Assembly (NCBI RefSeq): GCF_000143415.4
Contig: NW_003314278.1
Span: forward strand, 1,213,453 to 1,260,270
Reading direction: 5' to 3'
DNA length: 46,818 bases
Origin: Selaginella moellendorffii
Lineage: Eukaryota > Plantae > Lycopodiophyta
The position numbers and the translations under genes were made by a program. This document shows positions 1,947 to 33,814 of the stretch, piece after piece. The notes under the pieces are model-generated. The model searched no databases. It saw nothing but the letters and a program-made list of their open reading frames with translations, and had not been told where the DNA came from. Position 1 is the stretch's first letter. Each line of letters begins with the position of its first letter.

Positions 1947-3470
1947 TCAGCTACTGTTCATCATAGTTGGAGCAGAGGGAAAAATGTCACCGTATTTCGT
2001 GATGAACCAGCTGATTCTGGACCTAGGTCTCTGATCAAAGAGCCAAATACCAACTGCAAATTTGCATGTGAAGAGGTGTTCAAGCATCTCCACGGGGTTT
2101 TCATTGCATAGAATACACAGAGTTTTGTGAACTGTGAGCCAATCACCAACAGGGATGCTGTCCTGCACAAGAAGCCAGCTTACCTTAGCTTCCACCAGTG
2201 TCTTCCACATGTTCACAATGTACTTCTGATTCTTCAACTTCCACATAAGCTTGGTGTCAATTTTATCCATCAAAAGCTCTCTGCCATGCTTAGACCTGTA
2301 CATAAAAAAAGACACACTGAACTCATTACCTTCCCAGGATAACTGAGCCGGATCCTATATAAGATCAGATTTAGGTACTCCCCAAACTAGTGTATTGCAG
2401 AGCATTCTCCCAGTTGAACCTTAGGATCCAGTTCAGTGTATTTCCCTCTCTGATGTATCATCCTGATCCTTTTACCGAAGGCCATCCTGGGAACTGGGAC
2501 CTCCTTGGGAACTATACATGGAAACAGTGCACCACTGTTATGGGGATAAAAAACAATACCTTGAGGTGATGGGGTTGTTTCCATAACAAAGATGATTTGA
2601 GTCTCAGCACCATCAAGCATTATCCAATCACGAACCTCAATAACTTCAGTTTGTAAAGCAAGATGAAGGCGATCACAAGCAATGCTGCCTTAAGCTTTGA
2701 TGTGGAGTTTTCATCCTGGGTTGTAATGGGTTGTCATGAGGCCATCCGATGAGCAGGGTTTGCTCCAAGCGGACGTTAAACAAATACCTGACTTTACCTT
2801 TTTCATTGTATCATACCTTTTCCACTGCTGAGGAAGAAAAACAAGATCCCAACAAGAACTTTGCTGCAAGTGATGGCTTGCTAGCTCTTTGTAGATCCAA
2901 TAAGTCTTTGATCGAAGCTCCCACATTTCTATGCCACCTAGCCCAAAGACCTCTACCCAAGCCTGGAGCTGAACAGTCACCTATATACTGTTGATTACTG
3001 TTCTTATGCGCTACGTTGAAGAACAAGCGATCAGCTAATGCCTCTGTCAGATGGTCTGGTTCTTTCTGACTTAACCTGGGTAGGAGTGTGACTTCCATAT
3101 CTTCAACATCTCTTTTGCTATTCCATCCTGGACCTTCTTTGTGTTGAGAGGAGCAGTGCCAATCGATTCCTTGTTTCTAGTTACCACCCTGTCTAGGCAA
3201 GATCTTCAGTTTCGTGGATATAAACCTGACACAATCACTCTGAAGAGAAGAGCTTTGGATTGAATTCCTGGGTGTGGCACATTCCAAATAACTGAATTCC
3301 ACTCTACTTTTGCCCAGACTTTGCACCCGCTGGAGTTTCTAAAGTTTCTACATATGTCGTTGGAGATCAAGTGTTGGTGAGTTATCGGGTGTTGCGGATC
3401 CAAGGTTTTTGCTGCGTAGGTCCTTATCACATCGTCCAACAAGTTGGTCCACAAATCTATGTGGGGCACT
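1947..3470 (-). mobile_element. LINE (non-LTR) ORF2 3' remnant with zf-RVT-like zinc finger
   Basis: ORF 1947-2315 has W..LVQDSIPVGDW...CILC....E..EHLFTC.FA.GIW, the typical plant LINE C-terminal zinc finger. Upstream Trp-rich fragments lie on the same strand. Boundaries are approximate. Confidence 0.65.
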
Positions 3471-3849
3471 CAATGCACAACGTCAAGAGAAGATCCATGT
3501 GAAGCAGTTAGCTCGATATTGTGTGTGAACGGATTGATGTAAGGATTCTACCATATATTCTATGGTAGATATAGATAAACTCAACAAGATTGTATTTATG
3601 GAGCCCACAAGAGTAGGAGTGAGGTGTTATCATATTATGAATCCCACAAGATCAAGAGTGAGAGGTGTTAATCACATTTTTTATATGCTCCATATGATCC
3701 TGAGGTTTAGGGATATGAAGGGGGAGAGGAAGGGAAAAAAAGAATTAATTAGAGTGAAAATGCGAGTTATTGTGAAATCAGAGTATAAATGTGACGAGCT
3801 AACTTGCGCAGCTTAAAAGAGGGAAGTAGGAATGCTCGGATGGAGTTCC

Positions 3850-5130
3850 ACCAGGTAGAAAAGACAAGTCATACCTCAAGACTCGGATTGCTCCCAACCC
3901 CCTGCCTCCACCCGGTTGCCTACTTTAACCAAGCCCCAGCAGTCTTGGCGCACAGGGATGACATCAGCCCTAACCTCTTGCTCCACTGCTCCTACTTCTG
4001 AGCTTCTCCCCCCCTTAAGAAAAAAGGTCTGTTGCTCTCTTGGAGTTCAAGAGGCATCCTCTTCACCATCTCCTCTGTTTTTGCTAGCTAGTTAGCTCTT
4101 ACAAGAAGGAGCACAAGCCAAGTTCAGCTCCATGCTCAGCTCTATCATCTCCTCTTTAAGACACCTCACCTCTTTGAAGCCATTCAGGAGAGCTAGCACG
4201 CTTCACGTCCCCCCCCCCCTCTTTTTTTTGCGATTGTCTCTTCAAACTCATCATACTTATTTAACTCACCAAACCTTACCAAGCCGAGTGCAGGTTTTGA
4301 AACCCCATGAGTCACCTTCCATCTTCCAGTTGAGCTCTCCAACAATCTTGACGTGCGGATGCGTGCAAACTGCTCCTTGAGCCAGGACCATTTCTCCAGG
4401 AGATAACTTATGCTACAACACCCTCCGCTTGACGATCTCAATGTGGAAAGATCCACAAAGCTGTCCCACTCATCATAGTTGTAGAAGAAATCATCCTCAT
4501 ACTGCATCTGCAACCTTGCTCGAGCCCAAGCCTCCGCCATTGCAAGCTTCTCCCTCATCTTGATCAGCTCACACTTGAGGCGGCAAAACAAGTCCAGGTC
4601 CTGAGGAACAACAATGGAATACACCTTTCCTGGGTATCTGTCTCGAAACCTGTGAAAGTACAGTGGACGATGTGGTGTTTCAGATCGCAGCGGAATGATA
4701 ACTTGATGAAAGCAACAAAACCATCAAGCTCGCTCTTTGGGGATCAATTATCATCTCCTCCTTTGAAGCAATGAGCAGCAGGCCTTGATCGCATCCAGAA
4801 GTACTAGAGATAGTCTGCAAAAGCAAGTTTGACACCAGTTATTTTGGAACCACAGAAGAAAAAGAAGAAAAATAAACTCAAGTTTCAAAATTTATAGAGA
4901 TCCATACAATCCAAATCAAGATCAATCTTCCACGAACTTAATGCCGCTTTCAGCACCTCCAAGCTCTGCCGAAAAACGTAGCCACGGTATGCCACAATCG
5001 TTCGCTTGAAAATCTGAAGATGTCAATCGAAGCATGCAAGCAAAAACATGAAGTAAAGAAGCGCAGGTGGACAACAAAGGAGATGAACTGAGCGAGGCCA
5101 AGAACACATAAGGACTGAATGTAAGCATGT
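3850..5130 (-). pseudogene. Uncharacterised degenerate coding-like segment (possibly F-box-associated), copy 1
   Basis: Fragmented minus-strand ORFs (4193-4624, 4922-5128) are conserved in the second copy at 28450-29720. No family was confidently recognised. Confidence 0.3.
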
Positions 5131-5882
5131 GAGGCCTTGTGCGGTTTTTTCCTCTGTGCGTGGCTTCATGTGCAAAGAGTTTGGTGTGGTAAGGTATGTT
5201 GCGGAGCAGCCAGAAGCCCAGGGTGAATATAAGTACGTGAGGCCTTGTGAGGTTTTACCACCGCCCGAGGACTCCTGTGCACAGGCCCCGGGTGAGAGTC
5301 ATTTGCGAAAGTGTTCTGCATGAAACTGGTGCCCTGAGGCTTCTGGCCGTGTAGCCCCATGAAGAGCATTTTTTATTTAATTTGTGTAGAGTGTGGTTTA
5401 TTTTTGCATATTGAGTGTATCGATATCTTTTAGTTAGCAGATTATATTGAAGAACTGAAGACTACCTACAGTTAAGTGCATGCAGCAACAGATTATATAA
5501 AAAATGAATGCAGAGAATAACAAATCGGGATTTCTAGGAAGTTCGTGCGTGTTGTTAGTAATAATAAGTAATAATAATAATAATCATAAAAACCTGATGT
5601 TCAGCCAGTTAGAAGATTGTCTGAAAATTATGCATGTACTGATTCTTCAGCTCTTGAGCAATTGATTGCTGCTGGCTCACTTTCTATATATATCAAAGCG
5701 ATTTGTTTTTAACAATAAACATCTATAAGCTGTGACATTGTAAAGTTTGAAAAGGAAAAGAATTAGAAAAAGAAAAAACAGAAAACACGAGCTTTTTACT
5801 GCTACAGTTAAGTACTAACAAATCGGGATTTCTAGGGTATGTGTGCGGCGCTAGGGTTTGTGTGGTGTGTGTGTCATTTCTC

Positions 5883-8800
5883 ATGGAGTGGAAAACGTTT
5901 TTCAGGGATCCCACTTTCTGGTGGGACAACAGGTTCAAGAAGAAAAACAAGTTCTTCTCAGAGTCCTACCCGGATTTCAAACATGTTTCTACCGGAGAGA
6001 GCCTGTGGATCGCCAACAGGAAAACACCAACCTGGGTCTCTGCAAAAGTCGAGTCGCTCGCTGACCCAGCTGTAGGTAAGGCCACCACGGCCCGCTACAA
6101 ATCTCCACATACCCCACCTGTAGCTGGTGATGAACCGGTGAGTTTAGGGAGGCTGATACACCTCGTGAGAGACTCAGCTGAGAGCAGATCCCTTTCTTTG
6201 GGAAAACAAGCCCATGAAGCTGTGCTCAAGAGTGATGAGCACAAAAGCAACATCTACTTGTTGACGGGATTGATCGATATGTACTGCAAGTGTGGCGAGC
6301 TTGAGGAGGCTCGCAAGATTTTCGACTCCATGGGAACCCGGAGTCTTGTGTCCTACAACACGATCATCCAGGGCTGCGGCTCGAACGGGCAAGCTGAACT
6401 TGCTCTGGAGTACTACTCTGCCCTGAGAGCTTGTACCACCATTCAACCCAACGATTGGACACATGTCGCGGTGATCAGCGCCTGCTCCAGACTTGCTACC
6501 GAATCCAGCGAGAAGAGGGAGAGAGCTCTACGCATCGGGATGGAGATCCATTCAATGCTGAGCAAGGAGAAGAAACAGGTAGATCTGTTCGTGGCGACTT
6601 GCCTGGTAGACATGTACTGCAAGTGTGGCGAGCTTGAGGAGGCTCGCAAGATTTTCCACTCCATGGGAACTCGGAGTGTTGTGTCCTACAACGCGATCAT
6701 CCACGGCTGCGGCTCGAACGGGCAAGCTGAACTTGCTCTGGAGTACTACTCTGCCCTGAGAGCTGATAACACCATTCAACCTGACGATTGGACACATGTC
6801 GCGGTGATCAGCGCCTGCTCCACACTTGCTACCGAATCCAGCGAGAAGAGGGAGAGAGCTCTACGCATCGGGATGGAAGTCCATTCAGTACTGAGCAAGG
6901 AGAAGAAACATCTAGGTCTGTTCGTGGCGAATTGCCTGGTAGACATGTACTGCAAGTGTGGCGAGCTTGAGGAGGCTCGCAAGATTTTCCACTCCATGGG
7001 AACTCGGAGTGTTGTGTCCTACACGGCGATCATCCAGGGCTGCAACACGAACGGGCGAGCTGAACTTGCTCTGGAGTACTACTCTGCCCTGAGAGCTTGT
7101 ACCACCATTCAACCCAACGATCGGACTCATGTCGCGGTGATCAGTGCCTGCTCCAGACTTGCTACCGAATCCAGCGAGAAGAGGGAGAGAGCTCTACGCA
7201 TCGGGATGGAAGTTCATTCAGTACTGAGCAAGGAGAAGAAACATCTAGGTCTGTACATGGCGACTTGCCTGGTAGATATGTACTGCAAGTGTGGCGAGCT
7301 TGAGGAGGCTTGCAAGATTTTCCACTCCATGGGAACTCGGAGTGTTGTGTCCTACACCGCGATCATCCAGGGCTGCAACACGAACGGGCGAGCTGAACTT
7401 GCTCTGGAGTACTACTCTGCCCTGAGAGCTTGTACCACCATTCAACCCAACGATCGGGCACATGTCGCGGTGATCAGCGCCTGCTCCAGACTTGCTACCG
7501 AATCCAGCGAGAAGAGGGAGAGAGCTCTACGCATCGGGATGGAGATCCATTCAATGCTGAGCAAGGAGAAGAAACAGCTAGATCTGTTCGTGGCGACTTG
7601 CCTGGTAGACATGTACTGCAAGTGTTGTGAGCTTGAGGAGGCTCGCAAGATTTTCCACTCCATGGGAACCCGGAGTCTTGTGTCCTACAACGCGATCATC
7701 CACGGCTGCGGCTCGAACGGGCAAGCTGAACTTGCTCTGGAGTACTACTCTGCCCTGAGAGCTGATAACACCATTCAACCCGACGATCGGACTCATGTCG
7801 TGGTGATCAGCGCCTGCTCCAGACTTGCTACCGAATCCAGCGAGAAGAGGGAGAGAGCTCTACGCATCGGGATGGAGATCCATTCAATGCTGAGCAAGGA
7901 GAAGAAACAGGTAGATCTGTTCGTGGCGACTTGCCTGGTAGACATGTACTGCAAGTGTGGCGAGCTTGAGGAGGCTCGCAAGATTTTCCACTCCATGGGA
8001 ACTCGGAGTGTTGTGTCCTACACGGCGATCATCCAGGGCTGCAACACGAACGGGCAAGCTGAACTTGCTCTGGAGTACTACTCTGCCCTGAGAGCTGATA
8101 ACACCATTCAACCCGACGATCGGACTCATGTCGTGGTGATCAGCGCCTGCTCCAGACTTGCTACCGAATCCAGCGAGAAGAGGGAGAGAGCTCTACGCAT
8201 CGGGATGGAGATCCATTCAATGCTGAGCAAGGAGAAGAAACAGGTAGATCTGTTCGTGGCGAATTGCCTGGTAGACATGTACTGCAAGTGTGGCGAGCTT
8301 GAGGAGGCTCGCAAGATTTTCAACTCCATGGGAACTCGGAGTGTTGTGTCCTACACTGCGATCATCCAGGGCTGCAACACGAACGGGCGAGCTGAACTTG
8401 CTCTGGAGTACTACTCTGCCCTGAGAGCTGATAACACCATTCAAGCTGATGCCTGCACCTACACCTGCGTCCTTGTTGCTTGCGGGAGTGTGATGGCGAT
8501 CAAGCTCGGGAGGGAGATTCACCAGCTGGCGAAGCATAAAGGGCTGCTGAAAAACGATCCAGTTCTGGGCTCCAGCCTGGTGACCTTCTACGGCAAATGC
8601 GGCGATGTTGATTCTGCTCAGGAAGCATTTGACGAGTGCCGAGCTCGGGACGACACGGGTCTCTGGAACTCTCTCATACAGGCTTACACTCTCCAGGGCC
8701 GATCGGTCGAGGCCTTGGAGCGTTTCTATTCCATGACTCAGGAGGAGGGCTGTAAAGCTAACGATGTGAGTTTTGTTTCGGTGTTGAAAGCTTGCAGCCA

Positions 8801-9587
8801 TGGTGGTCTGGTCGGGAAAGGAAGGCAGCTTCTGGATGAAATGCCCAAGCAGTATGGAGTCAAGCCACGTCTGGAGCATTATGTGTGCCTGATCGATATG
8901 CTCGGGCGAGCTAACCTCCTCGACGAAGCTGTGAGAGTTCTCAGAGCCATGCCTTTTGAACCGGATGCAGTGGTTTGGACGTCCCTGCTAGGAGCCTGCC
9001 GGAAGTGGAAGAATTATACGATCGGCAAACTCGCGTTTGAGCGTCTTGTGGAGATGGATCCCAAGAGCGGCACGCCCTACGCATTGATGGCCAATATATT
9101 TGGAAACCTGGGGATGCTCAGTGAAAGGGCTGCTGTTGTGGAGAGAATGAGAGGTGAAGGCAGCTTCAGGGAGCCCGGGAGAAGCTGGTGGACGGATGTT
9201 AGCTCAGGAAAAGTGCATTCTTTTTCTGTCAGGGATAGGAGTCACTCACAGAGCGACGAGATTGCGGCCAAGCTCAAGCAATTGTTGCTGAGAATGAAGG
9301 AGGAGGGGTACGCGAGCGATGTGATCAACGTTCTAAAAGACATACCCGAGGAAGAGAAAGAGGATCACCTGTGCGGCCACAGTGAGAAGCTTGCGCTGGG
9401 GTGTGCTCTGGTGAACTCGCACCAGAAGGAGACCATCAGAATTGTGAAAAATCTCCCAGTTTGTGACGGTTGCCATGCGGCCACTGCTCTCATCTCTAAG
9501 CTGGAAAAAAGGCTAATCATCTGCAAAGATGCCAGTCGGGTTCATGTGTTCCAGGATGGCAGATGTTCCTGTGACAACTGCTTTTGA
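5883..9587 (+). CDS. PDF-motif / PLS-PPR / E1-E2 / DYW:WW deaminase protein, copy 1
   Basis: Open frame from ATG 5883 (the ORF track starts at GTG 5841). N-terminal WWDNR...PDFKH...LW...PTWV motif; six 111-aa P-L-S triplets; then P-L-S, P2-L2-S2, E1-E2; PGRSWW box, HSEKLA and CDGCH zinc ligands; ends CSCDNCF. The true start may involve an upstream exon. Confidence 0.93.
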   Translation: MEWKTFFRDPTFWWDNRFKKKNKFFSESYPDFKHVSTGESLWIANRKTPTWVSAKVESLADPAVGKATTARYKSPHTPPVAGDEPVSLGRLIHLVRDSAESRSLSLGKQAHEAVLKSDEHKSNIYLLTGLIDMYCKCGELEEARKIFDSMGTRSLVSYNTIIQGCGSNGQAELALEYYSALRACTTIQPNDWTHVAVISACSRLATESSEKRERALRIGMEIHSMLSKEKKQVDLFVATCLVDMYCKCGELEEARKIFHSMGTRSVVSYNAIIHGCGSNGQAELALEYYSALRADNTIQPDDWTHVAVISACSTLATESSEKRERALRIGMEVHSVLSKEKKHLGLFVANCLVDMYCKCGELEEARKIFHSMGTRSVVSYTAIIQGCNTNGRAELALEYYSALRACTTIQPNDRTHVAVISACSRLATESSEKRERALRIGMEVHSVLSKEKKHLGLYMATCLVDMYCKCGELEEACKIFHSMGTRSVVSYTAIIQGCNTNGRAELALEYYSALRACTTIQPNDRAHVAVISACSRLATESSEKRERALRIGMEIHSMLSKEKKQLDLFVATCLVDMYCKCCELEEARKIFHSMGTRSLVSYNAIIHGCGSNGQAELALEYYSALRADNTIQPDDRTHVVVISACSRLATESSEKRERALRIGMEIHSMLSKEKKQVDLFVATCLVDMYCKCGELEEARKIFHSMGTRSVVSYTAIIQGCNTNGQAELALEYYSALRADNTIQPDDRTHVVVISACSRLATESSEKRERALRIGMEIHSMLSKEKKQVDLFVANCLVDMYCKCGELEEARKIFNSMGTRSVVSYTAIIQGCNTNGRAELALEYYSALRADNTIQADACTYTCVLVACGSVMAIKLGREIHQLAKHKGLLKNDPVLGSSLVTFYGKCGDVDSAQEAFDECRARDDTGLWNSLIQAYTLQGRSVEALERFYSMTQEEGCKANDVSFVSVLKACSHGGLVGKGRQLLDEMPKQYGVKPRLEHYVCLIDMLGRANLLDEAVRVLRAMPFEPDAVVWTSLLGACRKWKNYTIGKLAFERLVEMDPKSGTPYALMANIFGNLGMLSERAAVVERMRGEGSFREPGRSWWTDVSSGKVHSFSVRDRSHSQSDEIAAKLKQLLLRMKEEGYASDVINVLKDIPEEEKEDHLCGHSEKLALGCALVNSHQKETIRIVKNLPVCDGCHAATALISKLEKRLIICKDASRVHVFQDGRCSCDNCF
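5889..6038 (+). other. OSB-type PDF motif (50 aa)
   Basis: WKTFFRDPTFWWDNRFKKKNKFFSESYPDFKHVSTGESLWIANRKTPTWV matches from memory the W..FF..P..WWDNR..K.....PDFKH..TG..LW....P.WV consensus of plant organellar ssDNA-binding (OSB/pTAC9) proteins. Confidence 0.85.
6252..8450 (+). repeat. 333-bp tandem repeat array (PPR S-P-longL units), copy 1
   Basis: P motifs start at 6345 + n x 333 (seven P motifs). Units are near-identical at the nucleotide level. Confidence 0.97.
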
Positions 9588-9965: not shown

Positions 9966-10318
9966 ATGGGTTTGATCTTTGGAACTAGCAGTGTTGTGGT
10001 TTTGATCCTCCTTTTTTCTGGATTCTTTGTTAGCTATGCTCACGACGAGGAAGTGTGTGGAGAGGTCTCGTCGGCTGCGTTTGCTCCAAAAGGAGATGTC
10101 ACGCCCGATGACAAGAAGTTACTGGCATTCCCTTTGAATCTCGAGTACCTGGAGACAGAGTTTTTCGCTTATGGGGCTCTCGGCTATGGCTTGGACAAGC
10201 TTGATCCCGGCCTTGCGGAGAATGGCCCGGCTCCAAAGGGTGCGCAGAAGGCCAAGCTCGACATTCTGGTTCGTGACATCATCGCCCAGTTTGCTCTGCA
10301 AGAAGTTGGTCACTTGAA
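9966..10318 (+). pseudogene. Desiccation-related protein PCC13-62 (ferritin-like) first exon fragment
   Basis: Signal-peptide-like N-terminus followed by LLAFPLNLEYLETEFF.YGALGYGLD...GPAPKGAQKA.LD...DIIAQFA.QEVGHL. It ends at a GT donor (10319) and the rest of the gene is absent. Confidence 0.85.
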
Positions 10319-10320
10319 GT

Positions 10321-10541
10321 ACGTCCCTGTCTGTCTCGACTTCAAACAACAAGTCGTGTAACAGCCCCTCGTACAGCTTGAGCGTCTTGCGCTCGGAGCG
10401 AGCATGCTCGTACAACCTCTGAGATCCCGCTGGATCGGTAACCTTGTCGTCCGTCCCATGCAGCACCAAGAAGGGAGTGCTCACGTTTTGCAAGTTCTTT
10501 TGCAAGAAAGCGGTGATTTTCAGAATCTCGGTACCCGTTCG
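10321..10541 (-). pseudogene. Monoacylglycerol lipase / caffeoylshikimate-esterase-like alpha/beta hydrolase C-terminal fragment
   Basis: RTGTEILKIT..LQKNL..VSTPFLVLHGTDDKVTDP.GSQRLYE.A.S..KTLKLYEGLLHDLLFE covers the catalytic Asp and His region. The nucleophile Ser region is absent. Confidence 0.85.
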
Positions 10542-11019: not shown

Positions 11020-12075
11020 TAAATATAATGGGCCAAATACACCGAAGAAGTGTGTATAAGAAGAGTAGAAACAAATTAAGAAATATAAATTAAGAATTGC
11101 AAAAGAAATGAAAATAAAAATTGTCCATCCTCATCAGTTTGCTGAAATTAAGTTGGATTCAATTCTTCCAGCTCCAAATATTGTGTGATTGAGTTGTAAG
11201 TTAATTAATAGTAGAAAATAAGAAAAAAAAAAACATTGAAAAAATAGTGTTTGATAATATCTTCTTTGCTTTTAGTTTTTTATTTTTGAAAGAAAATTAG
11301 GGAGTGCTAGTAAAGATATCTTTGCCGTTCATTGGTGGTTAATTAAATGAGCATGTTTAGAGATGTTTATAAGAGTTTAGCTCTGGACCAAGAGTTACCC
11401 GAAAATTAAAGTTCAAAATTTACGTGCACAATAAGCTAAATTAATGTACTTACCCTTATTTTTTATGGGAAATTTTGGATTCGCACGAAAAAAAGGCGAA
11501 TTTAGAGGATTCTTAAGTAATTTTCAAAATCCCCGACCAAATCTAAAGTGTTGGGGTCATTTTATTTTAAGGGAAGTTGTTAAAAATTATTCCGGAAATA
11601 TTCGAGAAGATTCTTAGATTAGGGTTTGGCGTGCCTGCGAAGAAGATCTGATCTCGCGGCACGGCCCGAGAATTAAAACATGGCAGCAGCCGCGGAGATT
11701 TATGAGGAGAGGAAGAAGCAGGTAATCCGATTTTAGGGTTGGAAGAGGAAACAGAGCTCTGGGAAATGGGGCTGGATCTGGGCCTGCTCGTGCTCTATCT
11801 TCACCAACAGGAGGAGGAAGAGGTGCCCATGGAGGGAGAGGTGGCCGGAGTGGGAGGAGGGCGCGGGGTGGCCGGGGTTGGCCGGGGTTGGCCGCGGATC
11901 TCTGAATCTGGCCCCGGGAGGATTAGGCCATGGTTCTGAGGCGGCTCGAGGAGGGGGTGCCCCGGGAGGAGGAGGCCATGGTTCTACTCTAGGAGGAGGA
12001 CGCCGCGGTTCTTCTCCGGGAGGAGGAGGCCATGGATCATCGCCAGGAGGAGCCCAAGCCACGTCCGGAGGAGTC
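11020..12075 (+). mobile_element. 5'-end fragment of the PIF/Harbinger-like element (AT-rich end plus Gly-rich start of the Myb/SANT gene)
   Basis: Near-identical to about 34500-35572, which leads into the Myb and HARBI1-like genes. Truncated at 12075. Confidence 0.7.
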
Positions 12076-12786
12076 GATCCAATTTGCAAGATCAAGAGGT
12101 ACTTGATGTCTGGAGAGAGTGCTGGAACCGACTGGCTCCCTCCGGAGTGCGATATCTCCATCAGGCCCGGTTGGTTTTGGCACAGGAACGAGGCTCCAAA
12201 ATCCCTGAAGCAGCTGCTCGACGTTTTCTACAAATCATCCGCCAGGAACTGCTTGCTCCTGCTCAACGTCCCTCCAAACTCGTCGGGACTGATCGGCGAA
12301 TCCGACTTCCAGACGCTGGAGCGGTTTAGCTCCGCCATAGATTCCATCTTCAGCGTCAACTTAGCAGCAAATCCCTTGTCCGTGACAGCAAGCAGCATTC
12401 GCAGCTCTTCGTTCGGGCCGCAGCAAATCCTTGACGAGTGTATGGAAACTTTCTGGGCTCCAATGCAAGGGGAGTCGACCGGCTGGATCGAGCTTGATCT
12501 TGGCAAGATCTCAAAGTTCAACGCACTGGAGATCCGAGAGCCAGTAAACATGGGACAAAGGGTCATGGAATATCACGTCGAGGCATGGGACAGCGAGCTG
12601 GGCTGGTACCTGGTGAGCAACGGTAGCACCATTGGTTACAGGAAAGTGGATCGACTGGAAGAGGATCAAGTATGCGCTGCTCGCCTCGTTCGACTGCTAA
12701 TTGATGCGTCGCGGGGAGATCCATTGATCTGCTTCTTTGGTTTGTACTTCGATATGTACAACCTCATGCACTTGTCTTCTATTTAG
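12076..12786 (+). pseudogene. GH29 alpha-L-fucosidase C-terminal fragment, fused in frame to a Gly-rich TE-derived N-terminus
   Basis: DWLPPECDISIRPGWFWH...PKSL.QLLDVFYKS.ARNCLLLLNVPPNSSGLI, followed by an F5/8-like C-terminal domain (EPV.MGQRV...GSTIGYRK). The N-terminal half of the catalytic barrel is missing. Confidence 0.88.
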
Positions 12787-23456: not shown

Positions 23457-24845
23457 CCCTAAAATCGGATTACCACCTCCTCAGGCCTCTCCATGTTTTA
23501 ATTCTCGGGCCGGCACCTAACCTAAGAATCTTCTCGAATATTTCCGGAATAAGTTTTAAGAACTTCCCTTAAAATAAAATGACCCCAACACTCGGGGTTT
23601 TTGAAAATTACTTTAGAATCCTCTAAATTCGCCTTTTTTTTTCGTGCGAATCCAAAATACCCATAAAAAATAAGGGTAAGTACATTACTTTAGCTTAAGT
23701 TATTGTGCAAATAGGGAAAACGTAAATTTTGAACTTTAATTTCGGGTAACTCTTGGTCCAGAGCTAAACTCTTATAAACATCTCTAAACATGCTCATTTA
23801 ATTAACAACCAACGAACGGAAAGATATCTTTACCAGCACTCCCCCACTAATTTTCTTTCGAAAATAAAAAACTAAAAGCAAAGAAGATATTATCAAACAC
23901 TATTTTTTCAATGTTTGTTTTTTTTCTTATTTTCTACTATTAATTAACTTACAACTCAATCACACAATATTTGGAGCTGGAAGAATTGAATCCAACTTAA
24001 TTTCAGCAAACTGATGAGGATGGACAATTTTTATTTTCATTTATTTTGCACTTCTTAATTTACATTTCTTAATTGTTTCTACTCTTCCTATACACACTTC
24101 TTCGGTGTATTTGGCCCATTATATTTAGCTGAAACACATGTACATGTACACTAGTACACTACGTACACTACGTACTAAGCCTATGATACACACTTGTTGC
24201 TAATTCTCAACGATTTGTGCATCTGCTGGTTGATACACACACACACACACTGTGTAGGGCTAGCTCCATCCACAAGAGAGCCTTGAGGTTGGGCACCAGA
24301 GGCTGGAAGAAGTCGTCACAGCAGAGAGCAAGCAGGTCACCACTCAGGACAAGCTCAAAAAATCTGGAAGGAAAACGTTGCCGAGGAACTGGTGAGTACG
24401 TTGCAAGAAACAAATGCCGTTGTCACCAGCTTCCACACGTCTTCAACGTGCTCTAGGAGCACAAACCCAAAGTTGGTCATGCTGCAAGCTGCCATCCATC
24501 ACCTTGCTCCCGGAACATGAGGCAGTACTTCCTATCAGCAAAGAGTTTAGGTACCGGCAAGTCTTCATACTAAGGCTTATTATCTGAATCTGGGCGCTCC
24601 GTTTTGGGGCACCTGTTGCCAAGTTTAGTCAGCATTCCCCAATTCTGCTACCAAAAGGAAATTTAAATTTAAGACAACGTGTCATCCTCCTTTTGCATAG
24701 TTTTAACTTTTAAATGTTAGTTTTTTCTCCGTGAAGTTCAGGTTGACGGCGGTACTTTGACGAGGCATGCAGCGGCCCATGTTTCTACTTGACTCACGGA
24801 GGGTTTAAAATCAGGGATAACTGCAAGAAAGAGCACTGACATGTT

Positions 24846-27800
24846 TTCAAAAGTACTTGTCACAGGAACATCTGCCATCCTGGAACACATGAACCCGACT
24901 GGCATCTTTGCAGATGATTAGCCTTTTTTCCAGCTTAGAGATGAGAGCAGTGGCCGCATGGCAATCGTCACAAACTCGGACCTTTTGCATAGTTTTAACT
25001 TTTAAATGTTAGTTTTTTCTCCGTGAAGTTCAGGTTGGCGGCAGTACTTTGACGAGGCATGCAGCGGCCCATGTTTCTGCTTGACTCACGGAGGGTTTAA
25101 AACCAGGGATAACTGCAAGAAAGAGCACTGACATGTTTTCAAAATTTGTTGCTGAGAATGAAAGAGGAGGGCTATGTGAGCGATGTGATCAACGTTCTAA
25201 AAGACATACCTGAGGAAGAGAAAGAGAGCTAACATCCGTCCACCAGCTTCTCCCGGGCTCCCTGAAGCTGCCTTCACCTCTCATTCTCTCCACAACAGCA
25301 GCCATTTCACTGAGCATCCCCAGGTTTCCAAATATATTGGCCATCAATGTGTAGGGCATGCCGCTCTTGGGATCCATCTCCACAAGACGCTCAAACGCGA
25401 GTTTGCCGATCGTGTAATTCTTCCACTTCCGGCAGGCTCCGAGCAGGGACGTCCAAACCACTGCATCCGGTTCAAAAGGCATGGCTCTGAGAACTCTCAC
25501 AGCTTCGTCAAGGAGGTTAGCTCGCCCGAGCATATCGATCAGGCATACATAATGCTCCAGACGTGGCTTGACTCCATACTGCTTGGGCATTTCATCCAGA
25601 AGCTGCCTTCCTTTCCCGACCAGACCACCATGGCTGCAAGCGTTCAACACCGAGACAAAACTCACATCGTCAGCTTTACAGCCCTCCTCCTGAGTCATGG
25701 AATAGAAACGCTCCAAGGCCTCGATCGATCGGCCCTGGAGAGTGTAAGCCTGTATAAGAGAGTTCCAGAGACCCGTGTTGTCCCGAGCTCGGCACTCGTC
25801 AAACGCTTCCTGAGCAGAATCAACATCGCCGCATTTGCCATAGAAGCTCACCAGGCTGGAGCCCAGAACTGGATTGTTTTTCAGCAGCCCCTCATGCTTC
25901 GCCAGCTGGTGAATCTCCCTCCCGAGCTTGATCGCCATCACACTCCCGCAAGCAACAAGGACGCAGGTGTAAGTGCAAGCATTAGCTTGAATGGTGTTAT
26001 CAGCTCTCAGGGCAGAGTAGTACTCCAGAGCAAGTTCAGCTCGCCCGTTCGTGTTGCAGCCCTGGATGATCGCGGTGTAGGACACAACACTCCGAGTTCC
26101 CATGGAGTGGAAAATCTTGCGAGCCTCATCAAGCTCGCCACACTTGCAGTACATGTCTACCAGGCAAGTCGCCATGTACAGACCTAGATGTTTCTTCTCC
26201 TTGCTCAGTACTGAATGGACTTCCATCCCGATGCGTAGAGCTCTCTCCCTCTTCTCGCTGGATTCGGTAGCAAGTGTGGAGCAGGCGCTGATCACCGCGA
26301 CATGTGTCCAATCATCAGGTTGAATGGTGTTATCAGCTCTCAGGGCAGAGTAGTACTCCAGAGCAAGTTCAGCTTGCCCGTTCGAGCCGCAGCCCTGGAT
26401 GATCGCGTTGTAGGACACAACACTTCGAGTTCCCATGGAGTGGAAAATCTTGCGAGCCTCCTCAAGCTCGCCACACTTGCAGTACATGTCTACCAGGCAA
26501 TTCGCCACGAACAGATCTACCTGTTTCTTCTCCTTGCTCAGCATTAAATGGATCTCCATCCCGATGCGTAGAGCTCTCTCCCTCTTCTCGCTGGATTCGG
26601 TAGCAAGTCTGGAGCAGGCGCTGATCACCGCGACATGAGTCCGATCGTTGGGTTGAATGGTGGTGCAAGCTCTCAGGGCAGAGTAGTACTCCAGAGCAAG
26701 TTCAGCTCGCCCGTTCGTGTTGCAGCCCTGGATGATCGCGGTGTAGGACACAACACTGCGAGTTCCCATGGAGTGGAAAATCTTGCGAGCCTCCTCAAGC
26801 TCGCCACACTTGCAGTACATGTCTACCAGGCAAGTCGCCATGTACAGACCTACATGTTTCTTCTCCTTGCTCAGTACTGAATGGACTTCCATCCCGATGC
26901 GTAGAGCTCTCTCCCTCTTCTCGCTGGATTCGGTAGCAAGTCTGGAGCACGCGCTGATCACCGCGACATGTGTCCAATCGTCGGGTTGAATGGTGTTATC
27001 AGCTCTCAGGGCAGAGTAGTACTCCAGAGCAAGTTCAGCTTGCCCGTTCGAGCCGCAGCCCTGGATGATCGCGTTGTAGGACACAACACTCCGAGTTCCC
27101 ATGGAGTGGAAAATCTTGCGAGCCTCCTCAAGCTCGCCACACTTGCAGTACATGTCTACCAGGCAAGTCGCCACGAACAGATCTACCTGTTTCTTCTCCT
27201 TGCTCAGCATTGAATGGATCCCCATCCCGATGCGTAGAGCTCTCTCCCTCTTCTCGCTGGATTCGGTAGCAAGTCTGGAGCAGGCGCTGATCACCGCGAC
27301 ATGAGTCCGATCGTTGGGTTGAATGGTGGTACAAGCTCTCAGGGCAGAGTAGTACTCCAGAGCAAGTTCAGGTTGCCCGTTCGAGCCGCAGCCCTGGATG
27401 ATCGCGTTGTAGGACACAACACTCCGGGTTCCCATGGAGTGGAAAATCTTGCGAGCCTCCTCAAGCTCGCCACACTTGCAGTACATGTCTACCAGGCAAG
27501 TCGCCACGAACAGATCTACCTGTTTCTTCTCCTTGCTCAGCATTGAATGGATCTCCATCCCGATGCGTAGAGCTCTCTCCCTCTTCTCGCTGGATTCGGT
27601 AGCAAGTCTGGAGCAGGCGCTGATCACCGCGACATGTGTCCAATCGTTGGGTTGAATGGTGGTACAAGCTCTCAGGGCAGAGTAGTACTCCAGAGCAAGT
27701 TCAGCTTGCCCGTTCGAGCCGCAGCCCTGGATGATCTCGTTGTAGGACACAACACTCCGGGTTCCCATGGAGTCGAAAATCTTGCGAGCCTCCTCAAGCT

Positions 27801-28205
27801 CGCCACACTTGCAGTACATATCGATCAATCCCGTCAACAAGTAGATGTTGCTTTTGTGCTCATCACTCTTGAGCACAGCTTCATGGGCTTGTTTTCCCAA
27901 AGAAAGGGATCTGCTCTCAGCTGAGTCTCTCACGCGGTGTATCAGCCTCCCTAAACTCACCGGTTCATCACCAGCTACAGGTGGGGTATGTGGAGATTTG
28001 TAGCGGGCCGTGGTGGCCTTACCTACAGCTGGGTCAGCGAGCGACTCGAGTTTTGCAGAGACCCAGGTTGGTGTTTTCCTGTTGGCGATCCCTCTCTCCG
28101 GTAGAAACATGTTTGAAATCCGGGTAGGACTCTGAGAAGAACTTGTTTTCCTTCTTGAACCTGTTGTCCCACCAGAAAGTGGGATCCCTGAAAAACGTTT
28201 TCCAC
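24846..28205 (-). pseudogene. PDF-PPR-DYW copy 2, disrupted
   Basis: A 5-nt deletion frameshifts the PDF motif near 28090. Five triplets and E1-E2 are intact. The DYW domain is broken after PGRSWWTDVS; the HSEKLA segment is absent; an internal piece is inverted (25146-25226); the C-terminal piece RVCDDCH...CSCDKYF* lies at 24846-24980. Confidence 0.9.
25981..27846 (-). repeat. 333-bp tandem PPR array, copy 2 (six P motifs)
   Basis: Period of 333 seen directly. Confidence 0.97.
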
Positions 28206-28449
28206 TGTGAGATTGTTGAGAAATGACAGACACACCACACAAACCCTAGCGCCGCACGCCGATTTGTTATTCTGCACTTAACTGCGTGTTTTCTGTTTTT
28301 TCTTTTTCTAATTCTTGTCCTTTTTAAACTTCACAATGTCACAGCAGAGTATAAATGTGAGTTAAGAGTTAACACGAGCTAAGAGTAAAAACGTTAGCAG
28401 CTTAAAAGAGGGAAGTAGGAATGCTCGGATGGAGTTCCACCAGGTAGAA

Positions 28450-29720
28450 AAGACAAGTCATACCTCATTGCTCCCAACCCCCTCCCTCCACCCGGTTGCC
28501 TACTTTAACCAAGCCCCGAAGCACCCAGCAGTCTTGGCGCACAGGGATGACATCAGCCCTAACCTCTTGCTCCACTGCTCCTACTTCTGAGCTGCTAGCA
28601 GCTTCTCCCCTCCTTAAAAAAAAAGGTCTGTTGTTCTCTTGGAGTTCAAGAGGCATCCTCTTCACCGTCTCCTCTGTTTTTGCTAGCTAATTAGCTCTTA
28701 CAAGAAGGAGCACAAGCCAAGTTCAGCTCTATCATCTCCTCTTTAAGACACCTCACCTCTTTGAAGCCATTCAGGAGAGCTAGCACGCTTCACGTCTAGA
28801 CGTCCCCCGCCCCCCTTTTTTTTTGCGATTGTCTCTTCAAACTCATCATACGTATTTAACTCACCAAACCTTACCAAGCCGAGTGCAGGTTTTTAAACCC
28901 CATGAGTCACCTTGGCCTTTTTCCATCTTCCAGTTGAGCTCTCCAACAGTCTTGACGTGCGGATGCGTGCAAACTGCTCCTTGAGCCAGGACCATTTCTC
29001 CAGGAGATAACTTATGCTACAACACTCTCCGCTCGACGATCTCAATGTGGAAAGATCCACAAAGCTGTCCCACTCATCATAGTTGTAGAAGATATCATCC
29101 TCATACTGCATCTGCAACCTTGCTCGAGCCCAAGCCTCCACCATCGCAAGCTTCTCCCTCATCTTGATCAGCTCACACTTGAGGCGGCAAAACAAGTCCA
29201 GGTCCTGAGGAACAACAATGGAATACACCTTTCCCGGGTACCTGTCTCGAAACCTGTGAAAGTACAGTGGACGATGTGGTGTTTCAGATCACAGCGGAAT
29301 GATAACTTGATGAAAGCAACAAAACCATCGAGCTCGCTCTTTGGGGATCAATTATCATCTCCTCCTTTGAAGCAATGAGCAGTAGGCCTTGATCACATCC
29401 AGAAGTACTAGAGATTGCAAAAGCAAGTTTGACACCAGTTATTTTGGCAACACAGAAGAAAAAGGAGAAAAATAAACTCAAGTTTCAAAATTTATAGAGA
29501 TCCATACAATCCAAATCAAGATCAATCCTCCACAAACTTAATGCCGCTTTCAGCACCTCCAAGCTCTGCCGAAAAACGTAGCCATGGTATGCCACAATCG
29601 TTCGCTTGAAAATCTGAAGATGTCAATCGAAGCATGTAAGCAAAAACATGAAGTAAAGAAGCGCAGGTGGACAACAAAGGAGATGAACTGAGCGAGGCCA
29701 AGAACACATATAAGGACTGA
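28450..29720 (-). pseudogene. Uncharacterised degenerate coding-like segment, copy 2 (spacer of the inverted repeat)
   Basis: Near-identical to 3850-5130. Confidence 0.3.
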
Positions 29721-30454
29721 ATGTAAGCACGTGAGGCCTCGCGTGGTTTTTTCCTCCGTGTGTGGCTTCATGTGCGAAGAGTTTGGTGTGGTAAGGTATG
29801 TTGCAGAGCAGCCAGAAGCCCAGGGTGAATATAAGTACGTGAGGCCTTGTGAGGTTTTACCACCGCCCGAGGACTCCTGTGCATGGGCCCCGGGCAAGAG
29901 TCATTTGCGAAGCTGTTCTGCATGAAACTGGTGCCCTCCCATGAAGAGCATTTTTTATTTAATTTGTGTAGAGTGTGGTTTATTTTTGCATATTGAGTGT
30001 ATTGATATCTTTTTGTTAGCAGATTCTATTGAAGAACTGAAGACTACCTACAGTTAAGTGCATGCAGCAACAAATCATATAAAAAATGAGTGCAGAGAAT
30101 AACAAATCGGGATTTCTAGGAAGTTCGTGCGTGTTATTAGTAATAATAATAATAATCATAAAAATTTGATGTTCAGCCAGTCAGAAGATTGTCTGAAAAT
30201 TATGCATGTACTGATTCTTCAGCTCTTGAGCAACTGATTGCTACTGGCTCACTTTCTATATATATCCAAGAGATTTTTTTTTAACAATAATGCTGCAGTT
30301 AAGCTGTGACATTGTAAAGTTTAAAAAGGAAAAGAATTGGAAAAAGAAAAAACAGAAAACACGACTACAGTTAAGTAATAACAAATCGGGATTTCTAGGG
30401 TATGCGTGCAGCACTAGGGTTTGTGTGGTGTGTGTGTCATTTCTCAACAATCTC

Positions 30455-33400: not shown

Positions 33401-33814
33401 CCTGGGAGAAGCTGGTGGACGGATGTTAGCTCAGGAAAAGTGCATTCTTTTTCTGTCGGGGATAGGAGTCACTCACAGAGCGACGAGATTGCGGCCGAGC
33501 TCAAGCCATTGTTGCTGAGAATGAAAGAGGAGGGGTACGCGAGCGATGTGATCAACGTTCTAAAAGACATACCCGAGGAAGAGAAAGAGGATCACCTGTG
33601 CGGCCACAGTGAGAAGCTTGCGCTGGGGTGTGCTCTGGTGAACTCGCACCAGAAGGAGACCATCAGAATTGTGAAAAATCTCCAAGTTTGTGACGATTGC
33701 CATGCGGCCACTGCTCTCATCTCTAAGCTGGAAAAAAGGCTAATCATCTGCAAAGATGCCAGTCGGGTTCATGTGTTCCAGGATGGCAGATGTTCCTGTG
33801 ACAACTACTTTTGA
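30455..33814 (+). CDS. PDF-motif / PLS-PPR / E1-E2 / DYW:WW deaminase protein, copy 3
   Basis: Open frame (the track starts at 30290; ATG 30455 matches the copy-1 start). The PDF motif lacks WKTF and reads WWDSR. Five triplets; HSEKLA and CDDCH are intact; ends CSCDNYF. Confidence 0.92.
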   Translation: MEFRDPTFWWDSRFKKKNKFFSESYPDFKHVSTGESLWIANRKTPTWVSAKLESLADPSVGKATTARYKSPHTPPVAGDEPVSLGRLIHRVRNSAESRSLSLGKQAHEAVLKSDEHKSNIYLLTGLIDMYCKCGELEEARKIFHSMGTRSVVSYNAIIQGCGSNGQPELALEYYSALRACTTIQPNGRTHVAVISACSKLATESSEKRERALRIGMGIHSMLSKEKKQVDLFVATCLVDMYCKCGELEEARKIFHSMGTRSVVSYNAIIQGCGLNGQAELALEYYSALRADNTIQPDDWTHVAVISACSRLATESSEKRERALRIGMEVHSMLSKEKKQLDLFVANCLVDMYCKCGELEEARKIFHSMGTRSVVSYTAIIQGCNTNGRAELALEYYSALRACTTIQPNDRTHVAVISACSTLATESSEKRERALRIGMEVHSILSKEKKHLGLYMATCLVDMYCKCGELEEACKIFHSMGTRSVVSYTAIIQGCNTNGRAELALEYYSALRADNTIQPDDRTHVVVISACSTLATESSEKRERALRIGMEIHSMLSKEKKQLDLFVANSLVDMYCKCGELEEARKIFHSMGTRSVVSYTAIIQGCNTNGRAELALEYYSALRADNTIQPDDRTHVVVISACSTLATESSEKRERALRIGIEIHSMLSKEKKQLDLFVANCLVDMYCKCGELEEARKIFHSMGTRSVVSYTAIIQGCNTNGRAELALEYYSALRADNTIQANACTYTCVLVACGSVMAIKLGREIHQVAKHKGLLKNDPVLGSSLVSFYGKCGDVDSAQEAFDECRARDDTGLWNSLIQAYTLQGRSIEALERFYSMTQEEGCKADDVSFVLVLNACSHGGLVGKGRQLLDEMPKQFGVKPRLEHYVCLIDMLGRANLLDEAVRVLRAMPFEPDAVVWTSLLGACWKWKNYTIGKLAFERLVEMDPKSGTPYALMANIFGNLGMLSERAAVVEKMRGESSFREPGRSWWTDVSSGKVHSFSVGDRSHSQSDEIAAELKPLLLRMKEEGYASDVINVLKDIPEEEKEDHLCGHSEKLALGCALVNSHQKETIRIVKNLQVCDDCHAATALISKLEKRLIICKDASRVHVFQDGRCSCDNYF
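30812..32677 (+). repeat. 333-bp tandem PPR array, copy 3 (six P motifs)
   Basis: P motifs start at 30905 + n x 333. Confidence 0.97.

What the first reader, a model, noticed from the sequence alone, without database searches (positions are those of the whole stretch)
5883..9587. OSB-type ssDNA-binding PDF motif fused to a PLS-PPR-DYW deaminase
Seen: all three paralogues begin with a 50-aa W..FF..P..WWDNR..K.....PDFKH..TG..LW....P.WV motif. A Pro-rich linker, the PPR array, E1-E2 and (in copies 1 and 3) a DYW domain with intact HxE and CxxC follow. Established: this consensus is the PDF motif at the C-terminus of plant organellar ssDNA-binding proteins (OSB1-4/pTAC9), where it contributes to ssDNA binding; PLS-DYW proteins are organellar C-to-U RNA editing factors that normally carry only a transit peptide upstream. 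Inference: this fusion could tether an editing factor to nucleoid ssDNA or R-loops (co-transcriptional editing), or direct a sequence-programmable cytidine deaminase towards ssDNA. I do not recall this architecture being functionally characterised, though I cannot exclude that similar fusions exist in other non-seed plants.
Basis: partly seen in the sequence, partly recalled or inferred. Interest (0 to 1): 0.9.

Follow-up and report, generated by a model that had tools for sequence, protein, structure and literature searches.

The report
PPR-DYW editor carrying OSB PDF domain
This spikemoss (Selaginella moellendorffii) gene for an organelle-type RNA-editing enzyme really does begin with the small "PDF" single-stranded-DNA-binding domain of plant OSB proteins, an old and widespread combination that I found in no paper and whose function is untested.

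Summary
Observation confirmed, with corrections. Copy 1 (5883-9587, +) is one 1234-codon ORF: PDF motif, a roughly 30-residue low-confidence linker, a PPR array, E/E+ motifs and a DYW deaminase.

- **PDF homology:** an HMM built only from PDF motifs of non-PPR (OSB-like) proteins matches copy 1 end to end at 62 bits. The best of 200 shuffles scores 9.4.
- **Copy 3:** intact, but it lacks the first four motif residues.
- **Copy 2:** a pseudogene. It has a 5-bp frameshift inside the motif, no ATG and a rearranged DYW region.
- **Transcript:** contigs of probable RNA runs pass unspliced from the leader through the motif into the first PPRs. They carry a sister copy's letters, not copy 1's.
- **Distribution:** PDF-PPR proteins also occur in Selaginella (a second lineage), ferns (Adiantum, Ceratopteris, Pteridium) and Sphagnum. 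ESM Atlas PPR and DYW clusters of 57-127 members share the fold.
- **Conservation:** every near-invariant OSB PDF residue is kept in the PPR-linked motifs.
- **Literature:** no paper found describes the fusion, and Pfam has no PDF model.

Function is inferred only: an accessory single-strand nucleic-acid anchor on an editing factor. ssDNA tethering or DNA deamination is untested. The scan has noted this architecture before on other DNA of this genome (26 notes).

The parts
5883..9587 (+). Copy 1: complete intron-less CDS, 1234 aa plus stop (PDF, linker, PPR array, E/E+, DYW)
   Evidence: ORF list; Pfam domains
5889..6053 (+). PDF motif of copy 1 (aa 3-57)
   Evidence: OSB-only PDF HMM 62.0 bits, positions 1-54 of 54, best shuffle 9.4. 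phmmer gave 454 hits. AF2 pLDDT 93.5, pTM 0.77.
6054..6143 (+). Linker between PDF and the first PPR helix (aa 58-87), probably flexible
   Evidence: AF2 of aa 1-250: residues 61-82 have pLDDT below 50; PPR helices start at aa 88
6144..9011 (+). PPR array, mostly near-identical 111-aa (333-bp) three-motif modules. The module landmark recurs 7 times, 111 aa apart.
   Evidence: Pfam PPR families; module landmarks at aa 131, 242 ... 797
9012..9296 (+). E motif and E+ motif
   Evidence: Pfam PF20431 at aa 1044-1102 and PF20430 at aa 1111-1138
9306..9581 (+). DYW deaminase domain with HSE and CxxCH; the C-terminus reads NCF instead of DYW
   Evidence: Pfam PF14432 2.2e-28, aa 1142-1233; sequence
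5839..6075 (+). Upstream ATG opening a 78-codon out-of-frame ORF that overlaps the PDF coding region. It lies inside the transcribed leader.
   Evidence: Translation; an RNA-type contig starts at 5808
5865..5874 (+). (GT)5 microsatellite in the leader. One unit fewer in paralogue L002 puts the upstream ATG in frame and adds 17 aa.
   Evidence: Alignment A3; N-termini of P0009, P0153 and P0154
30455..33814 (+). Copy 3: intact CDS, 1119 aa plus stop. The PDF (30461-30613) lacks its first four residues. DYW at 33533-33808.
25189..28242 (-). Copy 2: pseudogene. PDF remnant at 28204-28045 is split by a 5-bp deletion, there is no ATG, and the DYW region is deleted or rearranged.
   Evidence: Alignment; HMM hits in two frames; blastn of the 3' end

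Best explanation
**Shown**
- Copy 1, and copy 3 with a trimmed motif, encode a PLS-type PPR-E-DYW protein of the kind that performs C-to-U RNA editing in plant organelles.
- Its first 57 residues are a bona fide PDF domain, the 50-aa module that carries ssDNA binding in OSB proteins.
- The PDF is a separately folding small alpha/beta unit. It is joined to the PPR solenoid by a stretch of about 30 residues that AlphaFold2 models with low confidence.
- The gene belongs to an old, unannotated subfamily of PDF-PPR proteins found in Sphagnum, lycophytes and ferns.
- The window holds a young Selaginella-specific tandem cluster of that subfamily, and here the protein also carries a DYW domain.

**Inferred**
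- The PPR array selects the RNA target and the DYW domain deaminates the cytidine, as in other PPR-DYW editors.
- The PDF acts as a sequence-unspecific anchor for single-stranded nucleic acid at the N-terminal end of the array, which is the 5' side of the RNA footprint.
- My preferred version: it holds the editor on single-stranded DNA of the organelle nucleoid (transcription bubbles, R-loops, replication intermediates), so that nascent transcripts are met co-transcriptionally.
- Binding to RNA upstream of the PPR footprint is the close alternative.
For: **PDF identity**
- OSB-only HMM 62 bits, full length.
- Hits include proteins with the Pfam SSB domain plus 2-13 PDF repeats and proteins their sources name OSB1 and OSB3.
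- All near-invariant OSB columns (W1, P8, W11, D13, R15, K18, P28, D29, F30, L39, W40, P46, W48) are kept at 94-100% in 17 PPR-linked PDFs from moss, lycophyte and ferns. This argues for a retained biochemical role.

**Same protein and transcript**
- A single ORF.
- One 510-nt contig of a probable RNA run spans 5808-6308, and those runs have no depth over 3324-5680.

**Modularity**
- The PDF folds alone at pLDDT 93.5.
- In the 250-aa model the linker is at pLDDT below 50.

**Editor identity**
- Pfam E, E+ and DYW, with HSE and CxxCH.
- dN/dS of 0.42-0.56 in the C-terminal third among paralogues.

**Nucleic-acid role of the PDF**
- The PDF is reported as responsible or sufficient for ssDNA binding (PMC6963530, PMC6451138).
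- OSB1 and OSB2 prefer ssDNA over dsDNA or RNA (PMC4166229).

**Breadth**
- PDF-PPR proteins occur in Adiantum, Ceratopteris, Pteridium, Sphagnum species and Selaginella.
- Atlas clusters of PPR and DYW proteins share the PDF fold at TM 0.75-0.86.
Against: - No binding, localisation or editing data exist for any PDF-PPR protein.
- The protein starts directly with the PDF (M-E-W...), so there is no room for a classical cleavable transit peptide. Organelle targeting is therefore unshown.
- An out-of-frame upstream ATG sits in the leader and may damp translation.
- The RNA label of the runs is a guess by the tool. The contigs carry a sister paralogue's or allele's variants (a 9-nt insert behind 5878, and other letters at 6048 and 6163), so expression of copy 1 itself is not shown.
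- Within this young family the N-terminal 396 nt show too few changes to demonstrate selection: 0-1 synonymous against 3-5 non-synonymous.
- Several paralogues are decayed (copy 2; P0151, P0152 and P0154).
- The ssDNA preference was measured on whole OSB proteins, not on this PDF.
Confidence: 0.55

Rival explanations
1. RNA helper. The PDF binds single-stranded RNA, not DNA, just 5' of the PPR footprint. It adds unspecific affinity or keeps the target unfolded. This would be a built-in counterpart of accessory RNA-binding partners, in plants that lack MORF proteins (their absence from non-seed plants is stated from my own knowledge).
For: - The PDF is N-terminal, so it would sit on the 5' side of the bound RNA. 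This follows from the established parallel PPR-RNA orientation.
- Aromatic and basic invariant residues are kept, and the PPR-linked PDFs are less acidic at HMM columns 6, 9 and 34.
- There is precedent for an N-terminal RNA-binding domain on PPR proteins: maize PPR4 with an RRM (PMC9459714), and RRM-PPR and RRM-DYW fusions (PMC13386178).
Against: OSB1 and OSB2 are reported to prefer ssDNA over RNA (PMC4166229). No RNA-binding data exist for any PDF.
Confidence: 0.25
2. DNA-directed deaminase. The PDF brings the DYW deaminase onto single-stranded organellar DNA, and cytidines in DNA are deaminated.
For: Only the domain combination: an ssDNA-binding module together with an intact HxE/CxxC deaminase.
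Against: - Most PDF-PPR relatives found here end after the E motif and have no DYW domain. The PDF's conserved role therefore cannot depend on an attached deaminase.
- The PPR-E-DYW part is a conventional RNA-editor layout.
- From my own knowledge, DYW deaminases are described as RNA cytidine deaminases.
Confidence: 0.04
3. Not a nucleic-acid module in this setting. The PDF serves protein-protein contact (for example with OSB or other nucleoid proteins, or by self-association), or it acts as an unconventional targeting or retention signal.
For: - The protein has no conventional presequence. In most fusions the PDF sits within 2-54 residues of the N-terminus.
- In domain-fusion logic, fused domains often mark interacting partners (PMC13386178 discusses this for editing factors).
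Against: - The residues conserved between OSB PDFs and PPR-linked PDFs are the same set. That fits one shared ligand better than a new partner.
- Sphagnum P0184 has a 114-aa presequence-like N-terminus ahead of the PDF, so the PDF is not itself the targeting signal there.
Confidence: 0.1
4. Evolutionary baggage. This young tandem family is drifting towards pseudogenes, and the PDF is merely inherited from a PDF-PPR-E ancestor without a current function.
For: - Copy 2 is dead.
- Copy 3 lost four motif residues.
- Paralogues P0151, P0152 and P0154 carry frameshifts or altered ends.
- The N-terminal dN/dS is not below 1 on very few changes.
- The upstream ATG is out of frame in the leader.
Against: - ORFs of 1234, 1119 and 1029 codons are kept open through highly repetitive DNA.
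- C-terminal dN/dS is 0.42-0.56.
- Transcript-like contigs sit at high depth.
- None of the invariant PDF residues is changed in copies 1 and 3.
Confidence: 0.06

Closest known systems
OSB1-4 / pTAC9 (plant organellar ssDNA-binding proteins)
   Same: The same 50-55-aa PDF motif, matched full length by the HMM with all near-invariant residues. The same predicted small alpha/beta fold as an Atlas SSB-family cluster, TM 0.88. Like about 45% of OSB PDFs, it carries the 4-residue insert at HMM columns 19-22.
   Different: No OB-fold or SSB-like domain. The PDF is N-terminal and single, not C-terminal and often repeated. It is attached to a PPR-E-DYW body. No transit peptide lies ahead of it.
PLS-class PPR-DYW RNA editing factors (e.g. 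Physcomitrium PPR56, PMC10482289)
   Same: PPR array followed by E, E+ and a DYW domain with HxE and CxxC. Intron-less gene.
   Different: An N-terminal PDF domain in place of a presequence. The array is built of near-identical 111-aa modules whose number varies among paralogues: the module landmark recurs 5 to 7 times. The C-terminal tripeptide is NCF or NYF rather than DYW.
PDF-PPR-E proteins of other non-seed plants (Selaginella XP_024517303.1, Adiantum KAI5061374.1, Ceratopteris KP509_14G038700, Sphagnum CAM6051292.1, Pteridium EP00250_P014300)
   Same: N-terminal PDF (1-3 copies), a variable linker and a PLS-type array. The PDF of XP_024517303.1 is 62-63% identical to the window's and is its nearest neighbour in the tree.
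   Different: Those proteins end after the E motif and lack DYW. Most have a P-type first motif after the PDF that the window family has lost. They are single-copy-like genes, not a tandem array.
PPR proteins with an N-terminal RRM (maize PPR4; RRM-PPR fusions, PMC9459714 and PMC13386178)
   Same: A PPR tract combined with a separate, general nucleic-acid-binding domain at the N-terminus.
   Different: A different domain (RRM versus PDF), a different PPR class (mostly P-type, splicing), and a described function.

Membership tests
OSB family | One or more PDF motifs | tested here: met
   OSB-only HMM 62.0 bits, full length; phmmer hits to proteins named OSB1 and OSB3
OSB family | OB-fold / SSB-like domain N-terminal to the PDF motifs | tested here: not met
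   No SSB hit in copies 1 and 3 at E<=1. The PDF starts at residue 3 and everything downstream is PPR, E and DYW. OSB-like hits such as P0016 do show PF00436.
OSB family | N-terminal organelle transit peptide | tested here: inconclusive
   Only 2 residues precede the PDF. No in-frame upstream ATG in copy 1. No targeting predictor was available.
PLS-class PPR-DYW editing factors | Tandem PPR motifs | tested here: met
   PF13041 1.9e-97, PF01535 4.2e-87, PF12854 2.3e-55
PLS-class PPR-DYW editing factors | E1/E2 (E, E+) extension | tested here: met
   PF20431 7.6e-09 and PF20430 3.1e-05, both at or above the curated cut-offs
PLS-class PPR-DYW editing factors | DYW deaminase domain with HxE and CxxC zinc ligands | tested here: met
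   PF14432 2.2e-28 (copy 1) and 2.2e-30 (copy 3). HSE and C-D-G/D-C-H are visible in the translations. Not met in copy 2.
PLS-class PPR-DYW editing factors | Organellar localisation and site-specific C-to-U editing activity | not testable with these tools
   Needs localisation and editing assays
PDF-PPR subfamily (unnamed; defined here) | PDF motif(s) N-terminal to a PLS-type PPR array on one polypeptide | tested here: met
   for the window; for 12 relatives. One clade for all PPR-linked PDFs is not rejected (AU p 0.62), which does not prove a single origin.

The most novel reading that the evidence does not exclude
The PDF makes these proteins DNA-associated editors. They sit on single-stranded stretches of the organelle nucleoid (R-loops, transcription bubbles), so that editing in non-seed plants is physically coupled to transcription. 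In the extreme version, the DYW deaminase can also act on ssDNA, which would give a natural sequence-programmable ssDNA cytidine deaminase.
Probability: 0.12. Interest if true: 0.85.

Novelty: new variant of a known kind. Interest (0 to 1): 0.6.

Why it matters
PPR editing factors are usually described as a transit peptide, a PPR array and E/DYW, with accessory proteins (MORF, ORRM, OZ) supplied in trans in seed plants.

A conserved extra domain, borrowed from the organellar ssDNA-binding proteins, sits on PLS-type PPR proteins of mosses, lycophytes and ferns. That points to an unstudied link between the organelle DNA/nucleoid machinery and RNA editing in exactly the lineages with the heaviest editing.

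Domain surveys cannot see it because Pfam has no PDF model. A 2026 kingdom-wide survey of editing-factor fusions mentions neither PDF nor OSB.

The domain is small (55 aa), folds confidently and has no solved structure. Binding assays and deletion tests in the established E. coli editing system would therefore be cheap and decisive. If it raises affinity or processivity, it may be useful for engineered PPR editors.

Tried and rejected
- **Word-indexed protein searches.** Searches restricted to the PDF region of the window protein and of P0098 found only 3-4 candidates and no new relatives. That index is too insensitive for this short motif, so these blanks mean nothing. The same search with a 3-PDF fern protein worked.
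- **Solved structures.** phmmer gave no hit better than E 0.26, Foldseek none better than E 5, and VIA-align a best Z of 2.5. No structural analogue can be named.
- **Upstream exon supplying a transit peptide.** Rejected for the window. The RNA-type contig of X2 is collinear with the genome from 5808 and no joints were reported. A 31-nt unmatched 5' end on one contig of run X3 (another organism code) is not present anywhere in the window and stays unexplained.
- **The S/R-rich alternative frame over the motif as a real transit peptide.** Rejected. It is out of frame with the PPR ORF in copies 1 and 3, and it is read only in decayed copies (copy 2, P0151).
- **RefSeq's 497-aa models as real splicing of the repeat array.** Rejected as the main product, because the skipped part is an uninterrupted ORF within 1029 codons.
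- **Original OSB1 paper.** Zaegel et al. 2006 (PMC1785405) is not held, so statements on PDF biochemistry rest on reviews and later papers.
- **Atlas search by sequence.** It was busy and returned nothing.
- **Independent origins of the PPR-linked PDFs.** The free tree scatters them in about 5 places, but the single-clade constraint is not rejected. With 55 columns the question stays open.
Full report
**What is there.**
- The window is nuclear DNA of Selaginella moellendorffii. The motif is 98% identical to RefSeq XP_024536012.1, and sister paralogues carry Selaginella accessions.
- Copy 1 is an uninterrupted ORF from ATG 5883 to the stop at 9585-9587, 1234 aa.
- Pfam finds PPR repeats, the E motif (aa 1044-1102), the E+ motif (1111-1138) and a DYW deaminase domain (1142-1233, 2.2e-28). 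It finds nothing for the first 100 residues, because it has no PDF model.
- HSE and CxxCH are present in copies 1 and 3.

**Is the N-terminus a PDF motif?**
- phmmer of residues 1-61 against 1.84 billion representative proteins gave 454 hits at E<=1e-3 and 116 at E<=1e-10. Most are proteins of 250-560 aa with 2-13 matching stretches.
- Several of these carry the Pfam SSB domain.
- Their sources name P0060 "protein OSB1" (Populus) and P0021 "protein OSB3" (Amborella).
- I built an HMM from 372 PDF instances taken only from non-PPR proteins:

| Target | Score | Coverage |
|---|---|---|
| Copy 1 | 62.0 bits | HMM positions 1-54 of 54 |
| Copy 3 | 56.3 bits | positions 5-54 |
| Copy 2 | 38.8 + 6.5 bits | split over two frames |
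| Best of 200 shuffles | 9.4 bits | n/a |

- All near-invariant OSB columns are present.

**Corrections to the observation.**
- Copy 3 starts at 30455 and lacks WKTF through a 12-nt in-frame deletion.
- Copy 2 (minus strand, 25189-28242) has a 5-bp deletion inside the motif and no ATG. Its 3' end is rearranged, so most of the DYW domain is gone and an 81-bp piece is inverted. It is a pseudogene.

**Same transcript?**
- Three runs that the tool guesses to be RNA have no depth over 3324-5680 and high depth from about 5810 onward.
- One 510-nt contig (X2) covers 5808-6308 collinearly, and one (X3) covers 5866-6307. That spans the leader, the PDF, the linker and the first PPR motifs, with no joint.
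- The contigs carry a 9-nt insert behind 5878 and other letters at 6048 and 6163, as in sister copies. They therefore show that the family, not necessarily copy 1, is expressed with the motif on the PPR transcript.
- The leader contains an upstream ATG (5839) that opens a 78-codon out-of-frame ORF.
- In paralogue L002 one GT unit fewer in the (GT)n tract puts that ATG in frame and adds 17 residues.
- Either way there is no room for a classical transit peptide before a domain that folds at pLDDT 93.5.

**Structure.**
- With a 64-sequence alignment, AlphaFold2 gives the motif a confident small alpha/beta fold: H2-8, E13-15, H17-21, E32-34, H50-59, with pLDDT 93.5 and pTM 0.77.
- No solved structure resembles it.
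- In a model of residues 1-250 the fold is kept, residues 61-82 are at pLDDT below 50, and PPR helices start at residue 88. This describes an independent module on a probably flexible tether.
- A shape search of the ESM Atlas returns, besides an SSB-family cluster (TM 0.88), these Streptophyta clusters:

| Cluster | Members | TM |
|---|---|---|
| PPR | 127 | 0.84 |
| "DYW domain-containing" | 57 | 0.86 |
| "DYW domain-containing" | 63 | 0.75 |

**Relatives.**
- Among the 150 best representatives, four are PPR proteins.
- With a further search, the set of PDF-PPR proteins is:
  - Selaginella XP_024517303.1 and XP_024544116.1 (910-911 aa);
  - Adiantum capillus-veneris (two proteins) and A. nelumboides;
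  - Ceratopteris richardii;
  - Pteridium aquilinum;
  - a cluster in at least four Sphagnum species;
  - several unnamed transcript contigs.
- They have 1-3 N-terminal PDFs, a variable linker and a PLS-type array. They end after the E motif, without DYW.
- Sphagnum has a 114-aa presequence-like N-terminus ahead of the PDF.
- In a tree of 107 PDF instances the fern PPR-linked PDFs form one group (SH-aLRT 91). The window's PDF pairs with that of XP_024517303.1 in a three-row group that also holds one non-PPR multi-PDF instance, P0003 (SH-aLRT 99).
- A single clade of all PPR-linked PDFs is not rejected (AU p 0.62), but 55 columns cannot prove it.

**Selection.**
- Across moss, lycophyte and ferns the OSB-invariant residues are kept at 94-100%.
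- Among the young paralogues (copy 1, copy 3, L002), dN/dS is 0.42-0.56 in the C-terminal 1155 nt.
- The N-terminal 396 nt hold too few changes to judge.

**Literature.**
- The PDF is described as the ssDNA-binding element of OSB proteins (PMC6963530, PMC6451138, PMC13393729).
- OSB1 and OSB2 prefer ssDNA to dsDNA or RNA (PMC4166229).
- No paper in the searchable library combines the PDF motif or domain with PPR proteins.
- A 2026 survey of domain fusions among editing factors does not mention PDF or OSB.

**Earlier notes of this scan.**
- The scan holds 26 notes of the same architecture on other pieces of this genome, and the follow-ups listed reached the same conclusion. I re-tested the claims independently here.

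**Mechanism.**
- Shown: the domain identities, their order, one ORF, a transcript-like contig across the junction, a modular fold, and deep conservation of the PDF's key residues.
- Inferred: the protein is an organellar C-to-U editor, and its PDF anchors it to single-stranded nucleic acid.
- I favour ssDNA of the nucleoid (co-transcriptional editing) because of the reported OSB preference. RNA binding 5' of the PPR footprint is the close rival.
- A DNA-deaminase role is unlikely, because most PDF-PPR relatives have no deaminase.

**Verdict.** This is a real feature and a new (undescribed) variant of a known kind. It is already present, though unannotated, in public protein sets, and its function is untested.

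Noticed in passing
L002:2501-5590 (GL377592.1, older assembly) and the window copies: RefSeq models of this family (XP_024536012.1 and four sisters, about 470-498 aa) skip the whole repeated PPR array (junction ...LTGLID|IADNTIQ...). The locus nonetheless holds an uninterrupted 1029-codon ORF, so the models are probably wrong and hide the true size of the proteins.
   Followed up: partly
window 6252-8450 (copy 1) and the arrays of copies 2 and 3: The PPR array consists of near-identical 111-aa (333-bp) three-motif modules. The module landmark recurs 7 times in copy 1, 6 times in copies 2 and 3, and 5 times in L002. This is the subject of another note of the scan (s1-418728).
   Followed up: partly
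window 5839-5882; 30402-30454: A (GT)n microsatellite in the transcribed leader toggles an upstream ATG between in frame (17-aa extension MRAALGFVWCVSFLNNL in L002, P0153 and P0154) and out of frame (78-codon uORF overlapping the PDF, in copies 1 and 3).
   Followed up: partly
P0007 and cluster: Multi-PDF proteins (9 stretches) are encoded on 45-kb and 978-kb contigs of the dinoflagellate Effrenium voratum. A review states that PDF motifs are confined to green plants (PMC4166229).
   Followed up: no
PDF model md764f9f1ad8a: Weak shape matches (TM 0.54-0.67) to clusters of tailed-phage proteins, one of them carrying Rad52_Rad22 (single-strand annealing). They are too weak and too short to interpret, but are a lead on where the PDF fold comes from.
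   Followed up: no
window 5866 (run X3): One transcript-like contig of another organism code carries 31 unmatched letters 5' of 5866 that occur nowhere in the window. It may be a paralogue with another leader, a spliced leader exon or an assembly join.
   Followed up: partly
window 25146-25226 and 24632-25123: The 3' end of copy 2 is scrambled: an 81-bp piece of the DYW region is inverted and the downstream flanks are reordered.
   Followed up: partly
window 3808-6250 vs 28397-30810; 9966-10361; 11878-12786; 36639-37241: Copies 1 and 3 share about 2.1 kb of upstream DNA (92% identity over the 2.5-kb alignment, which also covers the start of the gene). Copies 2 and 3 lie head to head. Neighbouring ORFs are a ferritin-like domain ORF, an alpha-L-fucosidase / F5-F8 type C ORF, and a Harbinger/PIF-type DDE transposase ORF downstream of copy 3.
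   Followed up: partly
P0034 (Coptis chinensis KAF9616283.1): A 1526-aa model joins three PDF motifs to a kinesin motor domain. This is probably two genes merged by the annotation.
   Followed up: no
window 5940-5951 (aa 20-23 of copy 1): Among the 17 PPR-linked PDFs examined, only the window family carries the 4-residue insert at HMM columns 19-22, which about 45% of OSB PDFs have. Its closest relative, XP_024517303.1, lacks it.
   Followed up: no
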